Source: Octopus sinensis | Taxonomy: Eukaryota | Length of the DNA stretch: 32,255 bases | Direction of reading: 5' to 3' | Assembly: GCF_006345805.1 (NCBI RefSeq) | Contig: NW_021829646.1 | Coordinates: 1 to 32,255 of the forward strand | In this document: in pieces, positions 5,196 to 31,844 of the stretch | Layout of the letters: the number at the start of each line of letters is the position of its first letter | How positions within the stretch are numbered: position 1 is the stretch's first letter | Position numbers and translations under genes: made by a program | Notes under the pieces: generated by a model | Seen by the model: the letters and a program-made list of their open reading frames with translations, nothing else | Databases searched by the model: none | Told to the model about the DNA's origin: nothing

Positions 5196-6380
5196 TGTGT
5201 GTAAGTGTATTGAAAGATACAGGTAGTGAGAGAAGGGGAAGAGAGGGAGATCAAATATTAGAGCTTTTGTAAAACTAATTTACTATCGAAAATAAGAACA
5301 GCAACGTATTTAGTGCTTCGCAAGCAATTGTTAGTCGTTCACAATTGTATTTGCTGTCTCAAATTAGCTTTGCAAACTTGTAACTTTTAATATCGTTTTA
5401 TTAAAATCATAGCCTTTGACAAATGATATACGCAGAAATGTACATACATACATATATACATACATACATATATACGTAGATATGTTTGTGTGTGTATGTT
5501 TATGGAGGTACTGTCGGGTAATCAAACGAATGAACATGCGCTCACTTCATTATTAGTCTTGCGAAATGATATTTCACTCCTGCTTCGCTGTTGTTGTCGT
5601 ATTACATGACTTAATATAAAGATATGCGTTGTTTTAAATATAAATATACATGTATATATACATTCAGGCATGCATACATATATACAATTACGTAGGTATG
5701 TAAGTATGTATATATATATAGAGAGAGTGAGTTGAGCAAATGTATAGGTACGCTGCTATATGTATATATAGATATTTAAAAAATGGAACAAAAACGCAAT
5801 AGAGGACAATAAACATGAAGACTGTTAGTCAATACAAAAGTAGAGAGGAAAAACAACAATTAGTGCGACAAGAAAGGACGGGTCATTCGTGGCATTCTTT
5901 CATCAGTCAAGTTACCAGATGTCCTTACAGTTTCGGGCAGTTACACTTCAGACTGTTCGATCTGATTGTCCCCCAAAAAGTCTAAGGTAAGAGTATTAGA
6001 TTTTTTTGTAAGAAAGCAAGCGAATGTTTATGACAACAATGAAAAAAACGGAGAATATCTTGCGCAATTACAAATGCAAATAATAAGAATATAACAACAG
6101 GTGTCTTTCGACTGAAGACGAACCAAATTGAGCTGGCGTATATAAATTGAAAGCCTTAAGGCGGGAACATGGGAGATGGACATAAGAGGAGTTGGCGGTC
6201 GGCAGTCAGGCCAAGAAAGAAAAATCATGGCTGGCCGGACACAGGTCACGTGGAAGGAGGAGAGAGGGGTGGCATAATTTTTAAAAAATCAAAGAGACAA
6301 AGGGAAAGGTACAGGGGAGATAAAAGAAGAGGAAAAGTATGAGTTAAAGAAAGAAAGAGTGTGCGGAAAGGAATGCAAGG

Positions 6381-7840
6381 TATCCTGAGAAAGCCTATTC
6401 GTTTGGAAGTATCAGCCTTGCCGTAAGTTCAGTTGTGTGGAGAACAAAACTTGGAGGACAGATATGCGAGAAAGCTGGGAACTTCTTGTGGTATTCTCTG
6501 GCGCTGGAGAAGTCTACTGATCTCTCGAATACGTGTTCATTCGTGATGTTAATTTGGACTTTGAGATCACAGAAGTGTTGACATCGGTTTGTAGCATGCA
6601 GGGACCATCAACTGGAGAAGATATTTTCATGGAAGTGCAGAAAACTTAGCAAGGCTATAAACCTTCAGCGGAATCAGCTACGATGTGTTACAGTTGATGG
6701 AGAAAAAAAACATGACTAGAGTGAGGAAGGGTCTGGTGGGGTAGATCAGGACTAAGCTGGAAGGTCTTCAACTCCTGGGTATTATACATCAGCAAGCACC
6801 CTGTGGGAAAATCTTACATATTACTTGCGTGCTGAAATCAGTCGTTTCTGCGGTGAACTTCATTCGGGATCATGCCCATAATCACAGTCAGTTTCAGGCT
6901 TCTCTTGAAGGAATTGAACCTGAGTTTTGCGATTTGACTTATCGCACAGCAGTGAGGTGGCTCTGCTATGGTAACGTCTTCTTTTCTCTTTATAATCTCC
7001 AAAGAGAAATAGATATTTTCCTCACCGAAAGTGATAGAGCTGCTCCATTTCTGTCAGATCCTACTTGGCTGTCAAAGTTGTCATTTTTGGTTGACATCAC
7101 ATCTCACATGAACGAATTGAACTTGAAACTTCAGGTAAAGGATAACCTTATCTTTGATCTCTTCAAATCATCAAAGGATTTCGGAGAAAGCTATCATTGT
7201 TTGAATCAGAACTGGAAGGAGGAAACTTCTCTCATTTTCGGTGTTTCAAAGAGATTCGCGCTGGAATCGCAGAAGATGTTAACTTTGACTTTACGAATTA
7301 GATTATTCGTGACTTAAATAAGCATATTATGGAGTGATTTTCAGATGTCGACAGAACTGAAAGAGACATTCTTCGATTCCAGAATCCGTTTGATTGTAAG
7401 CATGATGACGTGCCAATAGAACTACAGTTGGTATCCAGTGATATCCAACAAACAAATGGCTTTTATCGGTGAGTGTGTTACATTATAAGGCACAAAAAGA
7501 AAATGACTCACCCCAAACACAACAGAATATGCTTCAACACACGAACTCACATAAAGAATCTTGCAAACCAAATCGAAAAACGAAATCTAATGTGATTATT
7601 TAAGTGAAGCAGCTCTTCGGTTTGAGGGTCAGACTCAACTTAATATCGCGAAAAGCAAAACTTGTTGAATGTTATCGCTGCGTACCTGATAATGTGTTTT
7701 CAAAGTTGAAAAGATTTGCCTCTGTTATGGCATCAGTGCTCGGAACTACTTATGTCTGTGAGCAAACATTTTCAAAAGTGAATAATGTGAAATCATCACA
7801 TTGATTGTAGTTAACTGATAAACATTCGAAAGCAATACTC
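6381..7840 (+). mobile_element. Degenerate hAT-superfamily DNA transposase (SPIN/Charlie/GTF2IRD2-like), pseudogenised
   Basis: Manual translation across frameshifts and stops gives YPEKAYSFGSISL...WYSLALEKSTD (from 6381), VFIRDVNLDFEITEVL...GPSTGEDIF, LRCVTVDG, KGLVG*IRTKLE, IIHQQAPC, then the ORF 6829-7317 segment (VNFIR...YRTAVRWL...WLSKLSFLVDITSHMNELNLKLQ), RFQNPFD...VPIELQL (~7375-7430), and the dimerisation-domain segment KLKRFASVMASVLGTTYVCEQTFSKVNNVKSSH*L*LTDKH (~7700-7830). These motifs match hAT transposases in the expected order. Interrupted at about 7431-7645. No TIRs found. Confidence 0.9.
7461..7596 (+). repeat. Foldback-family repeat arm 1, inserted in the hAT relic
   Basis: 7461-7550 is the near-perfect reverse complement of 7841-7930, and 7461-7528 is similar in the same orientation to 8091-8157. 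Confidence 0.85.
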
Positions 7841-8167
7841 TGAGTTCGTGTGTTGAAGCATATTCTGTTGTGTCTGGGGAGAGTCATTTTTTTTTTGTGC
7901 CCTATAATTTAACACACTCACCAGTAAAATTTCCATCTATTCCTTATTTTCATTTTCCTAATATTTTCTTTGCGTCTTGCAACCTTTTCAATAGCCTTGA
8001 ATATTGAAAAGGTTGCAATAGTCAAGACTATCGAAAAGGTTGCAAGATGCAACGGAAATTGTAGGAAAATAAAAAGGAATAAGTGAAAATTTTACCGGTG
8101 AGTGTGTTAAATTATAAAGCACAAAAAGAAAACGACGCTTTCCAGACACAACAGAATCACATTAGAT
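7841..8167. repeat. Long inverted repeat / foldback element (arm 2 at 7841-7993 reverse; arm 3 at 8033-8157 forward) with a duplicated hairpin tip
   Basis: The reverse complement of 7862-7989 aligns along its length with 8033-8157 (roughly 80% identity by eye). The centre has perfect pairings 7977-7993/8002-8018 (17 bp) and 7975-7989/8033-8047 (15 bp). Confidence 0.9.
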
Positions 8168-11453: not shown

Positions 11454-11664
11454 TATGTACATATACCGAGAGACAAATGATTATTTTTACGAGAATGATA
11501 TATTTCGATGTGAATAGTTGTTGTCTTAGTTCCATTTAAGATTTCGTCAAATAAAGTTGGTGTCTCCAAGTCGTATTTTCACGCACGTGCACACACACAC
11601 ACAAACACACACACATACACACACATATACATACGCATCAAAAGTTTTCGGTTCTCCGGCAGTT

Positions 11665-11858
11665 ACAGCGAAGAGTGTTCCAGTTAATCCGATCAACTGA
11701 ACATCCTACCCGTGTAGCTAAAATGGAAAGGGCTGAGCACTCCAGAGACTCGCGTGCACTCCACGCAGTTCCCGCGAGATTCAGCATGACTCAGAATGTG
11801 ACAAGCCTGACTCCTATGAATTACAGGTACAACATATTTTTACCAGCTGGGGCAACAT
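11665..11858 (-). mobile_element. Degenerate SINE 3' fragment (tail shared with the 27582-27971 SINE; short central module like the 21100 SINE)
   Basis: 11665-11832 aligns with 27615-27775 (gctgagcactcca, attcagc, tacaggtacaac). The minus strand of 11833-11858 resembles gttgctccag...ctgtagaaacgagttg in the 21100-21367 copy. Confidence 0.7.
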
Positions 11859-11974: not shown

Positions 11975-12168
11975 GGCTTATATCACCTAAATCGTCTAAT
12001 TTTTTTTTTTTCTCTCCCTGCTTATTTCTGTGTTCCTTTCTGGTGAAGAGCGTAGGCTCGAAACGTAAAAGACCTTCTCACTTCCCGAGCGTCAAACTAA
12101 TACGTTTGTTTGTTGTTTACATACCCGTCTTCGTCTTTTGTTTTGTTTATTCTTTTGTAAATTCTAAG
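11975..12168 (+). mobile_element. Penelope-like element terminal-repeat (pLTR-like) fragment, family 1
   Basis: Shares gaagagcgtaggctcgaaacgta...gagcgt.aaactaatac...tgtcttcgtcttttgttt with 19757-19944, 20006-20192 and 30825-30975, and contains a minimal hammerhead-like motif. The PLE assignment is inferred from that motif; no RT or GIY-YIG ORF is visible. Confidence 0.65.
12036..12071 (+). ncRNA. Minimal type I hammerhead ribozyme-like motif (A6 variant)
   Basis: cttt(12036-39)-CUGGUGA(12040-46)-a-GAGC/guag/GCUC(12048-59)-GAAA(12060-63)-CG-UA(12066-67)-aaag(12068-71). Stem I is cttt/aaag, stem II is a perfect 4-bp hairpin, and stem III is the palindromic ACGU. Confidence 0.6.
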
Positions 12169-13317: not shown

Positions 13318-13539
13318 TATTTCTTTACTACCCACAAGGGGCTAAACACAGAGAGGACAAAGAAGGACAGACAAACAGATTAAGTCGATTATATCGACCC
13401 CAGTGCGTAAATGGTAATTATTTAATCGACCCCGAAAGGATGAAAGGCAAAGTCGACCTCGGCGGAATTTGAACTCAGAACGTAGAGGCAGAACATTTTG
13501 CCATGATTGCTAACGATTCTGCCAGCACATTGCCGCCTT
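13318..13539 (-). mobile_element. tRNA-derived SINE, family B (same family as 26342-26573)
   Basis: High similarity to 26342-26573. Minus-strand box B gagttcaaattcc, core ggtcgactttgcctttcatcctttcggggtcga, tail ...gggtagtaaagaaata. The head is partly deleted. Confidence 0.9.
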
Positions 13540-13544
13540 CGTTT

Positions 13545-16025: not shown

Positions 16026-16269
16026 TAGTTTTGCAAACTATTACACCGTTTTGCCGGTCAATAATTTTTGATCTGGCAATTGTTCATTTCTTGCTTTAAC
16101 ATGTCTGATACGGTTTAGTAGTTTATTTTCTGATCACCAGGTTGGATAATTTACCGATTTGCTCGTCCAATCCTCTCTCCCAATGTCCACAAATTTGCGT
16201 ATATAATATGCGAATATGCGTATATGCAGCATAATATGGAAGGACAGTGTCGCTATCTACTTGTATTAG

Positions 16270-16450
16270 GTCATATAAATTGAGGCTCTGAAATCATATC
16301 TCAACAAGAAGTATGGTATTCTTTTCTCAGTATGAGATGGATTTATATCCAAAGGAAACTGCCTCTCCATTCAATTTTGGCGAATGCAGCTTTGGCTTGG
16401 AGGAAATGATGTCAAGAGTGAATGTCCGATTGTCATTGAATGTGTTCACT
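16270..16450 (-). mobile_element. Possible highly decayed RTE-type LINE RT fragment
   Basis: Minus-strand frames give NDNR...DI / QAKAAFAKI / LILRK, weakly recalling the RTE region downstream of the RT 'YLG' motif. Frameshifts and stops are present. Confidence 0.25.
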
Positions 16451-16923
16451 CTGAATTGTAAGACCTTCCAGCTGATGGCTAAATCACTGATCAAACTCGC
16501 CTCCTAACTTCAAGCTTAACTCCTCTCACTTCTGCTCTAACGAACATGAGGTTCTTTCTTCTGCTCTTCCCATTTTGCCCTCAAGGTCTCGATTATACTC
16601 TTCTCTGCAGAATTGTGACCTCGATCAGGATTTATTTATTTTGCCTTCTCAAAACGCAGAGCTACATGATAATCTACTAAATCTACTAAATAATCAACTT
16701 AGACTTTGGAAACAGTGCTACAGCATGGTCTCTAACCATTGACAGGGACCAATAAGAAACAAAACAATTAATATTTCAAACGATTCCTTTTTGATATATT
16801 TCTTAGTTTGAATATGACAAACTCCTGTTTACTTCAAAAGTCTCTTTTTATAGTCTATCGACCCCAACAAAATGAAACCCTTATTTTGTAATTTTTATGA
16901 TTTTTATTCTAAAAGATTTATGT

Positions 16924-16957
16924 CTCATATTTTTCTTCCTTTCTTTTTCAGGTAAGT
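16924..16957 (+). promoter_or_regulatory. Juxtaposed 3' and 5' splice-site consensus (candidate recursive splice site / ratchet point)
   Basis: Branch-like CTCAT at 16924-28, an uninterrupted pyrimidine run at 16930-16949, AG at 16950-51, and GTAAGT immediately after at 16952-57. Confidence 0.55.
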
Positions 16958-18832
16958 GATCCAAATTTGATCCAGTTTCTTCTTTCGCTGCACGAAAACT
17001 AGTTTCTAAAGTTCATCATTTGAAAGGTAAAGTTTTCCGTTCATTTTCCACGGGAGAAAAATCATATGTTCTATATATTAGATATATTATCATATACTGT
17101 TTAAAATCAGTGTTGAGATACGATTGTACCTGAGTCGATGCCGTCGATCAAAATCTTCGAGTTGCGAGGATTTAATACTCTGCATTAAGTTGGTCCAATC
17201 AAAACTCGGGCTTTTCCGAGTACATGATCATGTGATGCAGACCATGGTATCATTGATGTTATCATCTCTTTCTTTTCACTCCCCTCCACATCAGCATTGT
17301 CTTTCTCTCAAATATATTATTATCGTTATGGTTCAAATGTGGACGGCACATGTGGACGATTTTCATTTACAATACTTTATTTTCCGCGTTCAAATCCTGT
17401 TATGTAATTTTTTACGATTTGATAAAATACTTATCGTCAAATCTTAGAATCGATAAAAATAAACTGATCGCTGTTTTTACCAAATTTCAGAGAAATTTAG
17501 CTGCTATTTGTAGCAAGTCGAACCACCATATAAATGCTTATTGTTCAAGATTCGCACTTCCCCTTATTCATTTGGATATGAGACGATTTGGTATAGCTAT
17601 TTCGGCGTCACCTATTTGGCGTCGTTCATTCGACGCTGACTTACTTGACATCACCCATCACACGTGTTAGTCACGTTTCCTCGTCTCTCCCCCACCTCTC
17701 TCTCTCTCTCTCTCTGAGTATATTTGTATCTGGAAAGAGATATCTATGCCAATGATGTTCAAGAAAAAGATTGTAAGCTCACTCGTTCTCTCCCCTAATC
17801 TCACTCCTTTCCCCTATATTTTTTCCATCTGAAATCATATACTCCTGCATGCGCTTGCGGACGTGTATGTACGTGTGTTTACCTCAAATGACAAAATATA
17901 CTAATCCGGAAACCGGTTCAACCCACCAGTTAAACCTACCAAATCTCCAGCATCTAAACAGCACACCGAATCCTTTGCACCCGCAACCATACAGTGGTAT
18001 TTTGATGACATCAGTGAAATGATACAGGGATCGAAATCGCATCTACAATTTTCCATTTCTTTAATTGTAGCAGCAACGACGCTTTTAATTTACTGATATT
18101 TCCAACGCTCATCAAAACCCAGTTTTATATTTTTGGTTTTAGCTGTTTATATTTCTCCCTATTTTCTGTTTTTTTTTTTTTTTACTTGTGTTCTTCTAAT
18201 GTCGTAACATGTGTCACCCGAAGACTAGAATATGCTTCCGTAATGCAAGTCTGGAGGGGATAAAGTGGACATTTTTTTTTCATCTGTTTCCCTTTTGTAG
18301 TATAAATTAATACGCGAGGGAAACGTGACATTGCTGTTGAAATGCATCGCTCAACTACCAAAAACTTTTTTATCAAGTAATATATGGTATCAAAACATCG
18401 GGCGATATTTTCTTTGGAGTTCTTTCATTATTTTAGACTTATTAGGAATTGTAAATGATCTCCGGGCAAATCGTGCTGCAGATAGAAAAAGAAAACCAAG
18501 GAAAGAAAAGAAAAAAAACGAAAAAGAAAGCTAAAAATCTTTTAACACAAAATATGAATTCCTTTAAGTTTTAACCTAAAGCAGAAAAACGATCCACGCT
18601 TGCTTGAAAGGACACTTGATTCCACATGATATTTGCTGTGGTATTCTAATAACGATAAACATACGCTTCACTTTAACAAATAAATATCTACCGTAGGGTG
18701 CGCATATTAGATACAAAAGGCGGGAAATAGAGCGTTCTTCAAATGTGTGCGTCACTTTCCACTTTTCTAGTGCACACAAAGTAATTCATAATGAAAATTT
18801 GCTACCATATTTTGTATTCGAAAAAGCAGGAC

Positions 18833-19336: not shown

Positions 19337-19426
19337 ATTGATGTTATCGTTTCTATTACCTGACAGGTAACTTACATTTATCGATCCAGGAGCGATGAAA
19401 GGGTAAGTTCATCGCGGTGTGTTTTG
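19337..19426 (-). mobile_element. Old degenerate SINE fragment related to family B
   Basis: atttatcgatccaggagcgatgaaagggtaagt resembles atttatcgaccccgaaaggatgaaaggcaaagt at 26445-26477. Confidence 0.5.
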
Positions 19427-19756
19427 TACCGATTCAAATACTGACAAGGATTTTATGCAATTCTTTAACGCTTCGGCTAATGTAGAAATTTGTTGGCGAT
19501 TGTGAAGTCCAGATACACGAAGGACCTGACAAACTCCACGGCGTCGGGGACAATATGGATAATCGGAGAGTCCGGGATATCTATAACATGTATCAGCCAT
19601 GTCGTCGCTCAGTTCCTCTTGAAGCGAAGTCTTGGATAGATTTCAAAATTGATGCCAATATCATTTGTGCACTATTGATGGAATATTTTCCACGTAACAC
19701 AAATGATGTAGCGCTCTCGGCGGCGTTGGAGATATATATATATATATATATATATA

Positions 19757-19944
19757 GCCGCCATGATAGATCGTTAGCCACTACACACATTTTTCTCTCC
19801 TTGTTTCTCTCCTTGTTTTTTTCTGTAGAAGAGCGTAGGCTCGAATCGTACAAGACTTTTCTATTCCTGAGCGTTATACTAATACATCTGTTTGTTTTGT
19901 ACACTACCTGTCTTCGTCTTTTGTTTTTTTTCGTAAACTCTCAC
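19757..19944 (+). mobile_element. Penelope-like pLTR fragment, family 1, copy 1 of a local duplication
   Basis: Same family as 11975-12168. The hammerhead-like motif is decayed (CTGTAGA-a-GAGC-gtag-GCTC-GAAT). Flanked by (TA)n on both sides. Confidence 0.75.
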
Positions 19945-19957
19945 TATATATATATAT

Positions 19958-20005
<48 letters not shown>

Positions 20006-20192
20006 GCCGCATGATAGATCGTTAGCCACTACACACATTTTTCTCTCCTTGTTTCTCTCCTTGTTTTTTTCTGTAGAAGAGCGTAGGCTCGAATCGTACA
20101 AGACTTTTCTATTCCTGAGCGTTATACTAATACATCTGTTTGTTTTGTACACTACCTGTCTTCGTCTTTTGTTTTTTTTCGTAAACTCTCAC
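20006..20192 (+). mobile_element. Penelope-like pLTR fragment, family 1, copy 2 of a local duplication
   Basis: Identical by eye to 19757-19944 except for a one-base indel (gccgccatg vs gccgcatg). Flanked by (TA)n. Confidence 0.75.
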
Positions 20193-20214
20193 TATATATA
20201 TATATAATATATAT

Positions 20215-20256
<42 letters not shown>

Positions 20257-24835: not shown

Positions 24836-25250
24836 TAGGTGCAGGAGTAGCTGTGTGATAAGTAGCTTGCTAACCAACCACATGGTTGCGGGTTCAGTCC
24901 CACTGTGTGGCATTTTGGGCAAGGTCTTCTGCTATAGCCCGGCCCACCAATGCCTTGTTAGTGGATTTGGTAGACGGAAAATGAAAAGAAGCCGTCAGTA
25001 TATATGTATATATATATATGTGTATGTGTGTGTGTGTTTGTGTTTCTGTGTTCGTCCCTCTAGCATTGCTTGACAACCGATGTTGGTGTGTTTACATCCC
25101 CATCACTTAGCGGTTCGGCAAAAGAGACCGATAGAATAAGTACTGGGCTTACAAAAAGAATAAGTCCCGGGGTCGAATTGCTCGATTAAAGGCAGTGCTC
25201 CAGCATGGCCGCAGTCAAATGACTGAAACAAGTAAAAGAGTAAAAGAGTA
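24836..25250 (+). mobile_element. Full-length tRNA-derived SINE, family A, with an internal (TA)/(TG) microsatellite
   Basis: Box A-like tagctgtgtga (24848-58), box B ggttcagtccc (24891-901), internal microsatellite at about 25000-25050, and a 3' tail of agtaaaag repeats (25231-50). Confidence 0.9.
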
Positions 25251-25263
25251 ATATGTCTATCAA

Positions 25264-26001: not shown

Positions 26002-26165
26002 TCTTTCTGCTAGAGACACAAGGTCTGGATTTTGGGAGAGGGGACTAGTCTGTTATATCGAGGCCAGTGTTTAATTGTTACATAATTTATTGACCCTGTT
26101 AGGACGAAAGGCAAAGTCGACCTCGGCAGAATTTTAACTCAGAACGTAACGGCAGACGAAATGCC
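25941..26165 (-). mobile_element. Outermost SINE of the nest (family B sibling with a different 3' tail and a (TTA)n end)
   Basis: 26085-26165 matches the family B core. 26001-26060 is a different tail. (TAA)n at 25941-26000 lies at its 3' end on the minus strand. Confidence 0.75.
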
Positions 26166-26341
26166 TATTTCTTTACTACCCGCAAGGGGCTAAACACAGA
26201 GAGGGCAAACAAGGACAGACAGACAGATTAAGTCGATTATATCGAACCCAGTGCGTAACTGGTACTTATCCCCGAAAGGATGAAAGTTAAAGTCGATATC
26301 TGTGGAATTTGAACTCAGAACGTAGCGGCTGACGAAATACC
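26166..26341 (-). mobile_element. Middle SINE of the nest, family B body (its head lies at about 26574-26625)
   Basis: Matches the 26342-26524 segment of the inner copy. It begins on the minus strand at ggtatttcg, which is continued by the head fragment at 26574-26625. Confidence 0.85.
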
Positions 26342-26573
26342 TATTTCTTTATTACCCACAAGGGGCTAAACACAGAGGGGACAAACAAGGACAGACATAG
26401 GTATTAAGTCGATTACATCAACCCCAGTGCGTAACTGGTACTTAATTTATCGACCCCGAAAGGATGAAAGGCAAAGTCGACCTCGGCGGATTTTGAACTC
26501 ACAACGTAACGCAGACGAAATACCGCTAAGCATTTCGCCCGGCGTGCTAACGTTTCTGCCAGCTCGCCGCCTT
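26342..26573 (-). mobile_element. Innermost full-length family B SINE with a 9-bp target-site duplication
   Basis: Minus strand begins aaggcggcgagctggcagaaacgttagc (box A-like) and has box B gagttcaaaatcc. It is flanked by cgaaatacc at 26333-41 and 26574-82. Confidence 0.92.
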
Positions 26574-26625
26574 CGAAATACCGTTAAGCCTTTCGCCAGC
26601 CGTGCTATCGATTCTGATACTGCCA
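26574..26625 (-). mobile_element. Displaced 5' head of the middle family B SINE
   Basis: cgaaataccgttaagcctttcgccagccgtgctatcgattct is a diverged copy of cgaaataccgctaagcatttcgcccggcgtgctaacgtttct (26516-26557). Confidence 0.75.
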
Positions 26626-27097: not shown

Positions 27098-27238
27098 ACT
27101 CTCTTTTACCCTTTTACTCTTTTACTTGTTTCAGTCATTTGACTGTGGCCATGCTGGAGCACCGCCTTTTAGTCGAAAAAGGACTTATTCTTTGTAAGCC
27201 TAGTACTTATTATATCTGTGTCTTTTGCCGAACCGCTA
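27098..27238 (-). mobile_element. 5'-truncated family A SINE
   Basis: Reverse complement of 25108-25250 with an internal deletion; includes the tail repeats (cttttact)n. Confidence 0.88.
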
Positions 27239-27581: not shown

Positions 27582-27971
27582 GATGGATGGGAGCACTCCG
27601 TCGGTTACGACGATGAGGGTTCCGGTTGATCCGAATCAACGGAACAGCCTACTCGTGAAATTAACGTGTAAGTGGCTGAGCACTCCACAGACACGTGCAC
27701 CCTTAACGTAGTTCTCGGGATATTCAGCGTGACACAGAGTTGACAAGGCCGGCCCCCTTGAAATACAGGTACAACAGAAACAGGAAGTAAGAGTGAGAGA
27801 AAGTTGTGGTGAAAGAGTACGGCAGGGAGCACCACCATCCCCTGCCGGAGCCTCGTGGAGCTTTTAGGTGTTTTCGCTCAATAAACACTCACAACGCCCG
27901 GTCTGGGAATCGAAACCGCGATCCTATGACTGCGAGTCCGCTGCCCTAACCACTGGGCCATTGCGCCTCCG
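27582..27971 (-). mobile_element. Full-length tRNA-derived SINE, family D, with a probable 10-bp TSD
   Basis: Minus-strand head ggaggcgcaatggcccagtggttagggcagcggactcgcagtcataggatcgcggtttcgattccc, with box A at 27950-60 and box B at 27906-17. The flanks cattctttag (27572-81) and cattcttaag (27972-81) match at 9/10 positions. Confidence 0.92.
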
Positions 27972-28308
27972 CATTCTTAAGGTACATTCTCAGGTAAAAG
28001 ACACACACAGCATTCTGTATTAAACTATTATACAGGCATTAGTCAAGAATTTCGGGGTTTCAAACAGTTGTCTTATAAACAAATACGAGGTTGCCTCGAT
28101 TTCTTCATTCAGCACTTGGGACAATCACTTGGGATAATCGATAACCAAGCGTAGAGGAAGCGTTTGTTAGCTGAAATCATCCATAGACGGGTCAATTTCT
28201 AAGAAATTAAACCCATTAGATTTCAACTGGACTATTTATATTGCTGCCGGCAACGGGAGTTTGCCAATCGACGTAAAGTCGATCGGTCGTAAGTCGGATT
28301 GGTTGTGC

Positions 28309-30824: not shown

Positions 30825-30975
30825 CTTTCTATTTTTTTTATTCTCTCACTGTTTAGTTTCTTGTGTTCCTTTCTGCTGAAGAGCGTAGGCTGGAAACGTA
30901 AGACTTTCTCACCTTCACGAGCGTTAAAATAATACATCTGTTTGTTGCTTACACACCTGTCCCCGTCTTTGTTGG
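30825..30975 (+). mobile_element. Penelope-like pLTR fragment, family 1, with a CUGCUGA hammerhead-like core
   Basis: cttt(30869-72)-CUGCUGA(30873-79)-a-GAGC-guag-GCUG-GAAA-CG-UA. Same family as 11975-12168. Confidence 0.7.
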
Positions 30976-31844
30976 GGTTTTTTTTTGGGGGGGGGAGAAT
31001 CCCAACTATATATATATATATTATATATATATACACACACAAATGTATATATATATATATTATTTGAGGGAATAAAATCCAAATATTTTCTAATTTAGTA
31101 TATATATATATATATATTTATATATGTGCATGTCACAATAAATGGATTGGAGTGATGCGGTAATAATCTTCAAAGCCTCCTTAATGTATCATTCTACACA
31201 ACATAGAATATATATAGTAGAATAGCAGAGAAAAGAATAAAGTATGTGTAAAGCCATAAATGGCAGAGAAATATTTTGATGAAATTTTATTTATGATTAA
31301 CAAAAATCTTAATATCGCGAGAAATTATTTCCTAACTCAAAAACATAATATAAGACTTTATATTATCATATACAATTCTATACGTCTGCGTTAATGCAAA
31401 CTGTAAGAAATTTATTTATTATTAAATATGACAATAACTCTGCATGTTTTTGAGTTATGAAGCAATCATATATGTTATGAATTTAGAGGTAAATCATACT
31501 CCCTTTAAGGATATCTGCTTGTTTAGGCACTCGAAATCCGGATGTAGATACTATATTTGTGTAAGGTATGAATAAGTGTTTAAACGCTGGAGAAAAATTT
31601 TCTGCTGAGTATGATATTGAAAAAGGAGATCGGGGACCTTTTCCGTATTATTTTTTCATATTACACCATTACACGTGTTTCGTCTGCCGTTAGGAGTCAT
31701 GTAGTATATGCAATAGAAAAGATTTAAGGCATCTCCTATTAGAATTTCTTCATACAGACAATCTCACACACACACTCTCTCTTTCTCTCACTCCCTCGCT
31801 CTATCTCTCTATCAATGTATCTATCAATCTTTCTAGCTAGCTAG

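What the first reader, a model, noticed from the sequence alone, without database searches (positions are those of the whole stretch)
16924..17032. Candidate recursive splice site (zero-length exon) with a 75-nt cryptic exon closed in all frames
Seen: a branch-like CTCAT (A at 16927), 20 consecutive pyrimidines (16930-49), then CAG|GTAAGT. A consensus acceptor is thus fused to a perfect donor, in sequence I could not assign to any repeat. A second donor-like AAG|GTAAAG follows at 17026/17027, defining a 75-nt segment (16952-17026) with stops in all three phases (TAA 16953, TGA 16957, TAG 17000). Known: AG|GT ratchet points followed by a cryptic exon are the signature of recursive splicing in very long introns of Drosophila and vertebrates (Duff et al. 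2015; Sibley et al. 2015). Inference: the window lies in a long plus-strand intron that is removed stepwise. I am not aware of recursive splicing having been characterised in cephalopods, but I cannot check that.
Basis: partly seen in the sequence, partly recalled or inferred. Interest (0 to 1): 0.78.

Follow-up and report, generated by a model that had tools for sequence, protein, structure and literature searches.

The report
Candidate recursive splice site, octopus DNA
A textbook acceptor-fused-to-donor splice motif really is present in unique non-coding octopus-like DNA and is rarer than chance gives for one window, but whether it is transcribed, used or conserved could not be tested, so recursive splicing remains a plausible candidate only.

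Summary
The motif is a 20-nt pyrimidine tract followed by CAG|GTAAGT at 16951/16952. It has both the best acceptor score and the best donor score of all AG and GT sites on both strands of the window. About 0.005 sites this good are expected per window, and none comes close in 91 kb of other octopus DNA. It lies in a 2.8-kb block that matches no repeat in the window or in the fetched octopus loci. Two supporting points are weak. A donor as good as AAG|GTAAAG follows 8-21% of random positions, and stops in all three frames occur in 30-35% of random 75-mers. At genome scale (2-3 Gb) several hundred equally good motifs are expected by chance. The decisive evidence could not be obtained: an enclosing plus-strand intron, junction, lariat or saw-tooth reads, and conservation. 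No host gene, exon or orthologous locus could be recovered. The window is octopod, because it shares a SINE and other repeat families with an Octopus bimaculoides chromosome. My estimate is about 0.4 that it acts as a ratchet point with a 75-nt cryptic exon. I put about 0.38 on an unused chance motif and about 0.12 on an ordinary exon boundary. Verdict on the interpretation: cannot tell.

The parts
16924..16928 (+). Branch-point-like CTCAT (YTNAY), with its A at 16927, 24 nt upstream of the AG. A second candidate is TTTAT with its A at 16920 (-31).
   Evidence: A YTNAY in the -18..-40 interval occurs at 38% of random positions, so this is weak support.
16930..16949 (+). Uninterrupted 20-nt pyrimidine tract TTTTTCTTCCTTTCTTTTTC, with T,T at -6/-5 and C at -3. 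It lies in an AG-free zone, 16916-16949.
   Evidence: Only 1.4% (+) and 0.25% (-) of 20-mers in the window have 19 or more pyrimidines. TRF does not report it as a tandem array.
16949..16957 (+). Composite site CAG|GTAAGT. The acceptor AG ends at 16951 and is fused to a 9/9 consensus donor that starts at 16952 (a 'zero-length exon' or ratchet-point motif).
   Evidence: It is the only CAGGTAAGT in the window, with the best 3'ss score (10.4 bits) and the best 5'ss score (8.9 bits) on either strand.
16952..17026 (+). Putative 75-nt cryptic RS-exon. It has stops in all three frames (16953, 16957, 17000), and the longest open run from its first base is 16 codons.
   Evidence: No protein homologue was found for the ORF that overlaps it. 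Closure in all frames is expected in 30-35% of random 75-mers.
17024..17032 (+). Weaker downstream donor AAG|GTAAAG, with A instead of G at +5. It scores 2.9 bits against 8.9 for the ratchet donor.
   Evidence: It is the only other donor above 2 bits between 16940 and 17350. A donor this good occurs within 30-100 nt of 8% of random positions.

Best explanation
The element is a ratchet-point-type recursive splice site.

Proposed mechanism, all of it inferred: if the locus is transcribed on the plus strand inside a long intron, the strong acceptor (branch point about 16927, 20-nt pyrimidine tract, CAG) and the weak donor at 17026/7 are first recognised together as a 75-nt cryptic exon. The upstream exon is then spliced to 16952. 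That junction recreates a strong 5' splice site (exon end|GTAAGT), which outcompetes the weak donor at 17027. The 75-nt segment therefore leaves with the rest of the intron and never reaches mRNA. If the segment were retained, its stops in every frame would truncate the reading frame.

Only the sequence anatomy and its rarity are shown. Transcription, use of the site and selection on it are inferred.
For: The motif is exact and is the top-scoring acceptor and donor of the window. The expected chance number is about 0.005 per window. No dinucleotide shuffle reproduces it. No AG|GT site scores 13 or more in 91 kb of other octopus DNA, against 19.3 here.

It matches the published consensus (y)nNCAG|GTAAGT (PMC2773006). 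It has the TT at -5/-6 seen in 99.5% of fly ratchet points (10.1101/006163). It has a short downstream cryptic exon with a weaker donor, as the RS-exon model requires (PMC8605326).

The surrounding block 16030-18830 is not a repeat within the window or in 102 kb of fetched loci. No credible coding exon lies anywhere in the 32 kb, as expected inside a very long intron. [quoted passage not shown]
Against: There is no evidence of plus-strand transcription, of an enclosing intron, of junction or lariat reads, or of conservation. None of these could be tested.

A 2-3 Gb genome should hold several hundred equally good motifs by chance, most of them outside sense-strand introns. The weight of the argument depends on how many true recursive sites octopus has, and that number is unknown. 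Repeat-rich vertebrate genomes show almost no sense-strand enrichment (1.5-fold or less, PMC2773006), and this genome is repeat-rich.

The second donor and the stops in all frames are weak evidence. The splice-site matrices I used are approximate metazoan values from memory, not trained on octopus.
Confidence: 0.4

Rival explanations
1. It is a fortuitous motif that is not used. A T/C-rich tract in AT-rich non-coding DNA happens to abut a chance CAGGTAAGT. The locus is intergenic, antisense to any transcript, or too weakly transcribed for the site to matter.
For: Expected density is about 140-160 sites per Gb on both strands at a score of 19.3 or more. The window is 27% microsatellite and rich in pyrimidine tracts on the plus strand. 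No exon or gene was detected in 32 kb, which fits intergenic DNA. The accessory features are common by chance.
Against: For a single window the event is rare: about 0.005 expected, with the best acceptor and the best donor of about 6,900 candidate sites falling at one position. The chance model, if anything, overestimates the background, since 0 sites at 13 or more were seen against 1.3 expected in 91 kb. The tract is a discrete 20-nt run, not part of a microsatellite array.
Confidence: 0.38
2. It is an ordinary exon boundary rather than a recursive site. In one version, a non-coding or first exon ends at 16951 and uses CAG|GTAAGT as its normal donor; candidate upstream acceptors lie at 16586, 16611 and 16746, and there is a possible ATG at 16872. 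In the other version, 16952-17026 is an expressed 75-nt untranslated or lncRNA exon that merely begins with GTAAGT.
For: Acceptor-donor pairs 16586-16951, 16746-16951 and 16952-17026 are the three best exon-like pairs in the window. One frame is open for 32 codons up to the donor, from 16854 to 16949, and its in-frame ATG at 16872 would give the 26 residues MKPLFCNFYDFYSKRFMSHIFLPFFF. Hundreds of annotated human exons begin with a 5'ss-like sequence (PMC6224609).
Against: No frame is open across any of these candidate exons. The 26-residue peptide and the surrounding ORFs have no homologue and no Pfam family. A 20-nt pure pyrimidine run at an exon's 3' end is unusual, and so is an exact GTAAGT at an exon's first base (about 3e-4 by composition). 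My rough rate estimate puts this class about tenfold below the other two.
Confidence: 0.12
3. It is an intronic U1 snRNP docking site that acts without splicing, for example by suppressing premature cleavage and polyadenylation or by promoting another RNA-processing event. On this reading the pyrimidine tract is incidental.
For: The donor side is a perfect 9/9 match to the 5'ss consensus, which is defined by pairing with U1 (general knowledge). A conserved intronic U1-binding motif with a non-canonical role is documented in Drosophila mod(mdg4) (abstract of PMC4387717, as listed).
Against: It does not explain why the best acceptor of the window sits exactly on the donor. No test was possible.
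Confidence: 0.04

Closest known systems
Drosophila intronic ratchet points with cryptic RS-exons (Hatton 1998; Burnette 2005; Duff 2015, 10.1101/006163; Joseph 2018 and Joseph & Lai 2021, PMC8605326; Pai 2018, PMC6110457)
   Same: It has the (Y)nNCAG|GTAAGT core, a prominent pyrimidine tract, TT at -5/-6, and a short downstream cryptic exon closed by a weaker donor. That exon would introduce a stop if included. It sits in exon-free surroundings of at least 15 kb on each side.
   Different: No RNA evidence, no known host intron and no conservation data exist for this site, and all three define the fly set. The cryptic exon is 75 nt, against about 50 nt in flies, and its length is a multiple of three. 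The organism is a lophotrochozoan with a repeat-rich genome of 2-3 Gb, where the chance background is about 20 times higher than in the fly.
Vertebrate recursive splicing through RS-exons (Sibley 2015; Blazquez 2018, PMC6224609; Zhang 2018, PMC6110456)
   Same: The model is the same: the RS-exon is defined first, a 5'ss is then reconstituted, and the two donors compete. The setting is also similar, a large repeat-rich genome with very long introns.
   Different: Only nine fully suppressed intronic sites were noted definitively in mammals, according to PMC8605326. Vertebrate large introns show almost no sense-strand enrichment of the motif (PMC2773006). If octopus resembles vertebrates, a motif alone predicts little.
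Pseudo-exons and zero-length exons that arise by chance in long introns (Grellscheid & Smith 2006, as summarised in PMC2773006; the DMD pseudoexon review PMC7175933 surfaced but was not read)
   Same: It is a non-coding segment flanked by good splice signals and closed in all frames.
   Different: Typical pseudo-exons do not carry a perfect donor fused to the acceptor.

Membership tests
Recursive splice site (ratchet point with cryptic RS-exon) | [quoted passage not shown] | tested here: met
   The match is exact, with the best acceptor and the best donor score in the window.
Recursive splice site (ratchet point with cryptic RS-exon) | TT at positions -5/-6 and a pyrimidine tract more prominent than at ordinary acceptors (fly set, 10.1101/006163) | tested here: met
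   T,T at 16946/16947 and 20 consecutive pyrimidines. Whether this fly-specific preference applies to octopus is unknown.
Recursive splice site (ratchet point with cryptic RS-exon) | A downstream 5' splice site, weaker than the ratchet donor, that defines a short cryptic exon | tested here: met
   AAG|GTAAAG lies 75 nt downstream and scores 2.9 bits against 8.9. The chance of a donor this good is 8% within 30-100 nt and 21% within 30-250 nt.
Recursive splice site (ratchet point with cryptic RS-exon) | The cryptic exon disrupts the reading frame if included (out of frame or with a premature stop) | tested here: met
   Searches show stops in all three frames. The feature hardly discriminates, because 30-35% of random 75-mers share it. 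The length of 75 nt is a multiple of three.
Recursive splice site (ratchet point with cryptic RS-exon) | Location on the sense strand of a long intron (tens of kb) | not testable with these tools
   No annotation and no cephalopod DNA search are available. No coding exon was detected in the window, which fits an intron longer than 32 kb and intergenic DNA equally. One search had reduced sensitivity: it missed the hAT homologues that one search found.
Recursive splice site (ratchet point with cryptic RS-exon) | Splicing intermediates: upstream-exon-to-site junction reads, recursive lariats, saw-tooth coverage in total RNA | not testable with these tools
   No RNA-seq data are accessible.
Recursive splice site (ratchet point with cryptic RS-exon) | The AG|GT core is conserved above its flanks in related species | not testable with these tools
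   I tried to reach orthologous DNA and failed. ORFs near the site have no entry or relative in the protein collection. An exact 36-mer is absent from the JGI metagenomes. Only 91 kb of unrelated octopus loci could be fetched.
Recursive splice site (ratchet point with cryptic RS-exon) | Not part of an interspersed repeat | tested here: inconclusive
   There is no second copy in the window and no match in 102 kb of fetched loci. The window's SINE, by contrast, hits 8 or more times in one 18-kb O. bimaculoides locus. Only very high copy numbers are excluded.
Ordinary protein-coding exon boundary | An open reading frame across the exon, with homology to a known protein | tested here: not met
   No frame is open across 16586-16951, 16746-16951 or 16952-17026. 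No homologue or Pfam family was found.

The most novel reading that the evidence does not exclude
This is a selected, constitutively used ratchet point in a very long intron of an octopus gene. It would be the first recursive splice site described in a cephalopod or any lophotrochozoan. Together with the motif enrichment reported for insects and sea urchin, it would imply that recursive splicing with cryptic RS-exons is ancestral to bilaterians. It would also imply that the mechanism helps process the very long introns of a large, repeat-rich invertebrate genome.
Probability: 0.33. Interest if true: 0.55.

Novelty: new member of a known kind. Interest (0 to 1): 0.35.

Why it matters
Recursive splicing has been demonstrated experimentally only in Drosophila and vertebrates. 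For other invertebrates there is only a motif-enrichment argument (PMC2773006). Octopus genomes combine a vertebrate-like repeat load, which is visible in this window, with invertebrate ancestry.

Octopus therefore sits at the point where two published ideas disagree. One holds that recursive sites are the invertebrate solution for long introns. The other holds that repeat-rich genomes dispense with them.

A validated site would give a concrete locus for testing this in a third major animal lineage. A single motif cannot do that. A genome-wide census of such motifs, sense against antisense in long introns, could be run immediately on public assemblies and would.

Tried and rejected
1. I looked for the host gene or orthologous DNA through the protein collection.
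- Ten ORFs from 16126-17667, concatenated, gave no hit.
- 72 high-entropy ORFs from the whole window, concatenated to 4902 aa, gave no hit. This query also missed the hAT homologues that a shorter query later found, so its negative result is weak.
- Exact look-up of the ten longest ORFs found none in the collection.

2. An exact 36-mer around the site is absent from the JGI metagenome contigs.

3. A string from the SINE was not found in the paper library.

4. Pfam on 20 ORFs gave nothing, apart from one sub-threshold Atrophin-1 match in a low-complexity ORF. Rfam on the whole window gave nothing.

5. I built a small exon finder from approximate splice-site matrices plus open frames. At strict thresholds it gave 13 candidates and at loose thresholds 34. 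Nearly all lie in the hAT remnant, SINEs, other repeats or microsatellites, and none is credible.

It gave one spurious hit to a 12-residue motif in a repetitive protein.

7. I considered using strand skews and SINE orientation as proxies for the direction of transcription. I rejected this: microsatellites dominate the composition, and there are too few independent repeat copies.

8. I considered the second-best AG|GT site (19367, plus strand, 11.2 bits, with AGG|GTAAGT 36 nt downstream) as a possible sister site. I rejected it as evidence because scores near 11-12 also occur in the control loci.

9. The whole-window repeat finder was swamped by microsatellites, so I used BLAST self-comparison instead.

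Full report
OBSERVATION. The sequence is exactly as described.
- CTCAT lies at 16924-16928, with its A at 16927.
- Positions 16930-16949 are 20 uninterrupted pyrimidines, TTTTTCTTCCTTTCTTTTTC.
- CAG|GTAAGT has its junction at 16951/16952.
- AAG|GTAAAG has its junction at 17026/17027.
- TAA (16953), TGA (16957) and TAG (17000) close the three phases of the 75-nt segment.

T,T sits at -6/-5. The zone 16916-16949 is free of AG. A second branch-like TTTAT has its A at 16920. In the phase that starts at 16952, only 16 codons are open before the stop.

IS IT MORE THAN CHANCE? CAGGTAAGT occurs once on both strands. Composition and Markov models expect 0.07-0.21 occurrences.

I scored every AG and GT with approximate metazoan splice-site matrices. 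These matrices come from memory and were not trained on octopus.
- The site has the highest acceptor score of 3260 AG dinucleotides (10.4 bits; the next best score 8.3 and 8.0).
- It has the highest donor score (8.9 bits; the next best scores 8.1).
- Its combined AG|GT score is 19.3, against 11.2 for the runner-up.

I combined the window's own distribution of pyrimidine-tract scores, which keeps its many T/C microsatellites, with Markov probabilities for the nine-mer. This predicts about 0.005 sites this good per window on both strands, or 140-160 per Gb.

Three checks agree that the site is an outlier.
- None of 100 dinucleotide-preserving shuffles gave a match, even with three mismatches allowed.
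The model expected 1.3, so it is conservative if anything.
- The relaxed pattern Y12-N-YAG|GTRAGT is absent from all seven fetched loci.

For one window the motif is thus a real outlier, at roughly p = 0.005 or less. A 2-3 Gb genome should still contain several hundred such sites by chance.

A donor at least as good as AAG|GTAAAG follows 8% of random positions within 30-100 nt and 21% within 30-250 nt. Closure in all three frames holds for 30% of all 75-mers and 35% of non-repeat 75-mers. A YTNAY in branch-point range occurs at 38% of random positions.

SURROUNDINGS. The window is 34% G+C. TRF arrays cover 27% of it, and it has no Rfam match.

The site lies in a block, about 16030-18830, that has no second copy in the window. 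That block also has no match in 102 kb of fetched loci. Several interspersed families occur elsewhere in the window.

No ORF around the site has a homologue or a Pfam family.

A simple exon finder, using splice-site matrices plus open frames, gave 13 candidates at strict thresholds and 34 at loose thresholds. Nearly all fall in transposon remnants, SINEs or microsatellites. The best exon-like pairs in the whole window are 16586-16951, 16952-17026 and 16746-16951. All of them use the site itself, and none has an open frame.

The window therefore looks free of internal coding exons. That fits a very long intron and an intergenic region equally well.

ORIGIN. A broken hAT transposase of the GTF2IRD2/FAM200 type lies at about 6348-7841 (+). 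Its homologues include Octopus bimaculoides and O. sinensis proteins.

The window shares its tRNA-derived SINE and at least three other repeat families with a 21-kb piece of O. bimaculoides chromosome CM046605.1. The SINE has 8 or more copies in the 18 kb of that piece that is not N. None of these families appears in 73 kb of O. sinensis loci.

The window is therefore octopod, and closer to O. bimaculoides than to O. sinensis among the genomes sampled.

WHAT COULD NOT BE TESTED. Three kinds of evidence decide between a ratchet point and a chance motif: a sense-strand host intron, RNA intermediates and conservation. I could reach none of them.
- The protein collection holds no product of this window.
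- No DNA search of eukaryotic genomes is available.
- An exact 36-mer is absent from the JGI metagenomes.
- The long concatenated query missed hAT homologues that the shorter query found. Its negative result on exons is therefore weak.

MECHANISM AND PROBABILITIES. If the locus is transcribed on the plus strand inside an intron, the anatomy predicts the published RS-exon pathway (PMC8605326).
1. The 75-nt segment is defined as an exon by the strong acceptor and the weak donor.
2. The upstream exon is spliced to 16952.
3. This regenerates exon|GTAAGT.
4. The regenerated donor outcompetes the weak donor at 17027 (8.9 against 2.9 bits).
5. The segment leaves with the rest of the intron.

The site also carries TT at -5/-6, found in 99.5% of fly ratchet points (10.1101/006163), and matches the consensus (y)nNCAG|GTAAGT (PMC2773006).

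I weighed the hypotheses by their expected rates per window.
- Chance sites that also have a downstream donor: about 0.001.
- True recursive sites: about 1.6e-6 times their unknown number in the genome.
- Equality therefore needs about 500 sites genome-wide, before a modest bonus for the branch point and the TT.

Flies have more than 500 such sites (PMC8605326). Insects and sea urchin show several-fold sense-strand enrichment of the motif in large introns (PMC2773006). Mammals have only a handful of fully suppressed sites and an enrichment of 1.5-fold or less (PMC8605326, PMC2773006). Lungfish resembles human (10.1101/2024.12.11.627982). Octopus is an invertebrate with a repeat-rich, vertebrate-sized genome, so either regime is possible.

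My estimates are:
- about 0.40 that the site is used recursively, of which about 0.33 is a selected site and the rest a chance motif that happens to lie in a sense intron;
- about 0.38 that it is an unused chance motif;
- about 0.12 that it is an ordinary exon boundary, either the donor of a non-coding or first exon or the acceptor of an expressed 75-nt non-coding exon;
- about 0.04 that it is a U1 docking site with no splicing role.

These numbers rest on approximate matrices and on a guessed prior. They should be read as 'about even', not as a measurement.

COMPARISON WITH WHAT IS KNOWN. By sequence the element meets every motif-level criterion of a Drosophila-type ratchet point with a cryptic RS-exon. 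The criteria that actually define the experimentally established sets are untested: location in a sense-strand long intron, splicing intermediates and conservation. I therefore describe it as 'works like, if used' and not as an established member.

The library contains no report of recursive splicing in cephalopods or molluscs. One search found one incidental co-mention. None of the 15 top-ranked papers mentions recursive splicing.

VERDICT. If true, it would be a new member of a known kind in a new lineage, which is moderately interesting. The next steps are cheap: map the window to an annotated assembly, inspect total RNA-seq, and run a sense-versus-antisense census of the motif.

Noticed in passing
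window 6348-7841 (+): A decayed hAT transposase of the GTF2IRD2/FAM200/ZBED5-like type, split over several frames. Its protein is 49-55% identical to intact 350-600-aa proteins, including ones from Octopus. Its DNA is 82% identical to ENA metagenome contigs that carry an intact 595-aa ORF (L002, L003), and 73% identical to an O. bimaculoides copy (L001). Pfam did not recognise the fragments directly.
   Followed up: partly
window 7862-8157; also 7461-7549 against 7841-7929: A 296-nt near-palindrome that is 83% self-complementary, plus a 92% inverted repeat pair. Both lie immediately downstream of, or overlap the end of, the hAT remnant. They may be terminal or MITE-like structures of the element.
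   Followed up: no
window 13318-13541 and 26047-26580: Copies of a tRNA-derived SINE. The second site is a 176-nt tandem array of 2.4 units. All copies have their tRNA-like head on the minus strand. The family has 8 or more copies in 18 kb of an O. bimaculoides locus (L001) and none in 73 kb of O. sinensis loci (L004-L007). This suggests a lineage-specific expansion and places the window nearer to O. bimaculoides.
   Followed up: partly
window 19732-20253: A 248-nt unit duplicated in tandem (2.1 copies, 97% identical). Each copy is bounded by TA microsatellites. A related sequence lies at 12007-12148 and 30838-31063.
   Followed up: no
window 19367-19408 (+): The second-best AG|GT composite site of the window lies on the same strand. 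It is CAG|GTAACT (11.2 bits), followed 36 nt later by a strong donor, AGG|GTAAGT. Scores of this size also occur in the control octopus loci, so I did not count it as support.
   Followed up: partly
window 19412-19642 (-) and 19486-19734 (+): A relatively G+C- and CpG-rich stretch with protein-like ORFs on both strands (77 aa on the minus strand). It has no Pfam family. In 1.8 billion representative proteins there is only one spurious 12-residue repeat match.
   Followed up: yes
window 27593-27973, 11654-11834; 25019-25251, 27106-27238: Further interspersed repeat families shared with the O. bimaculoides locus L001 (87% and 78% identity). Their class was not determined.
   Followed up: no
tools:: A 4902-aa concatenated query to the search for homologous proteins returned nothing. 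A 485-aa query containing the same hAT segments returned 59 hits. Long concatenated queries lose sensitivity at the word-sharing stage, so negative results from them are weak.
   Followed up: yes
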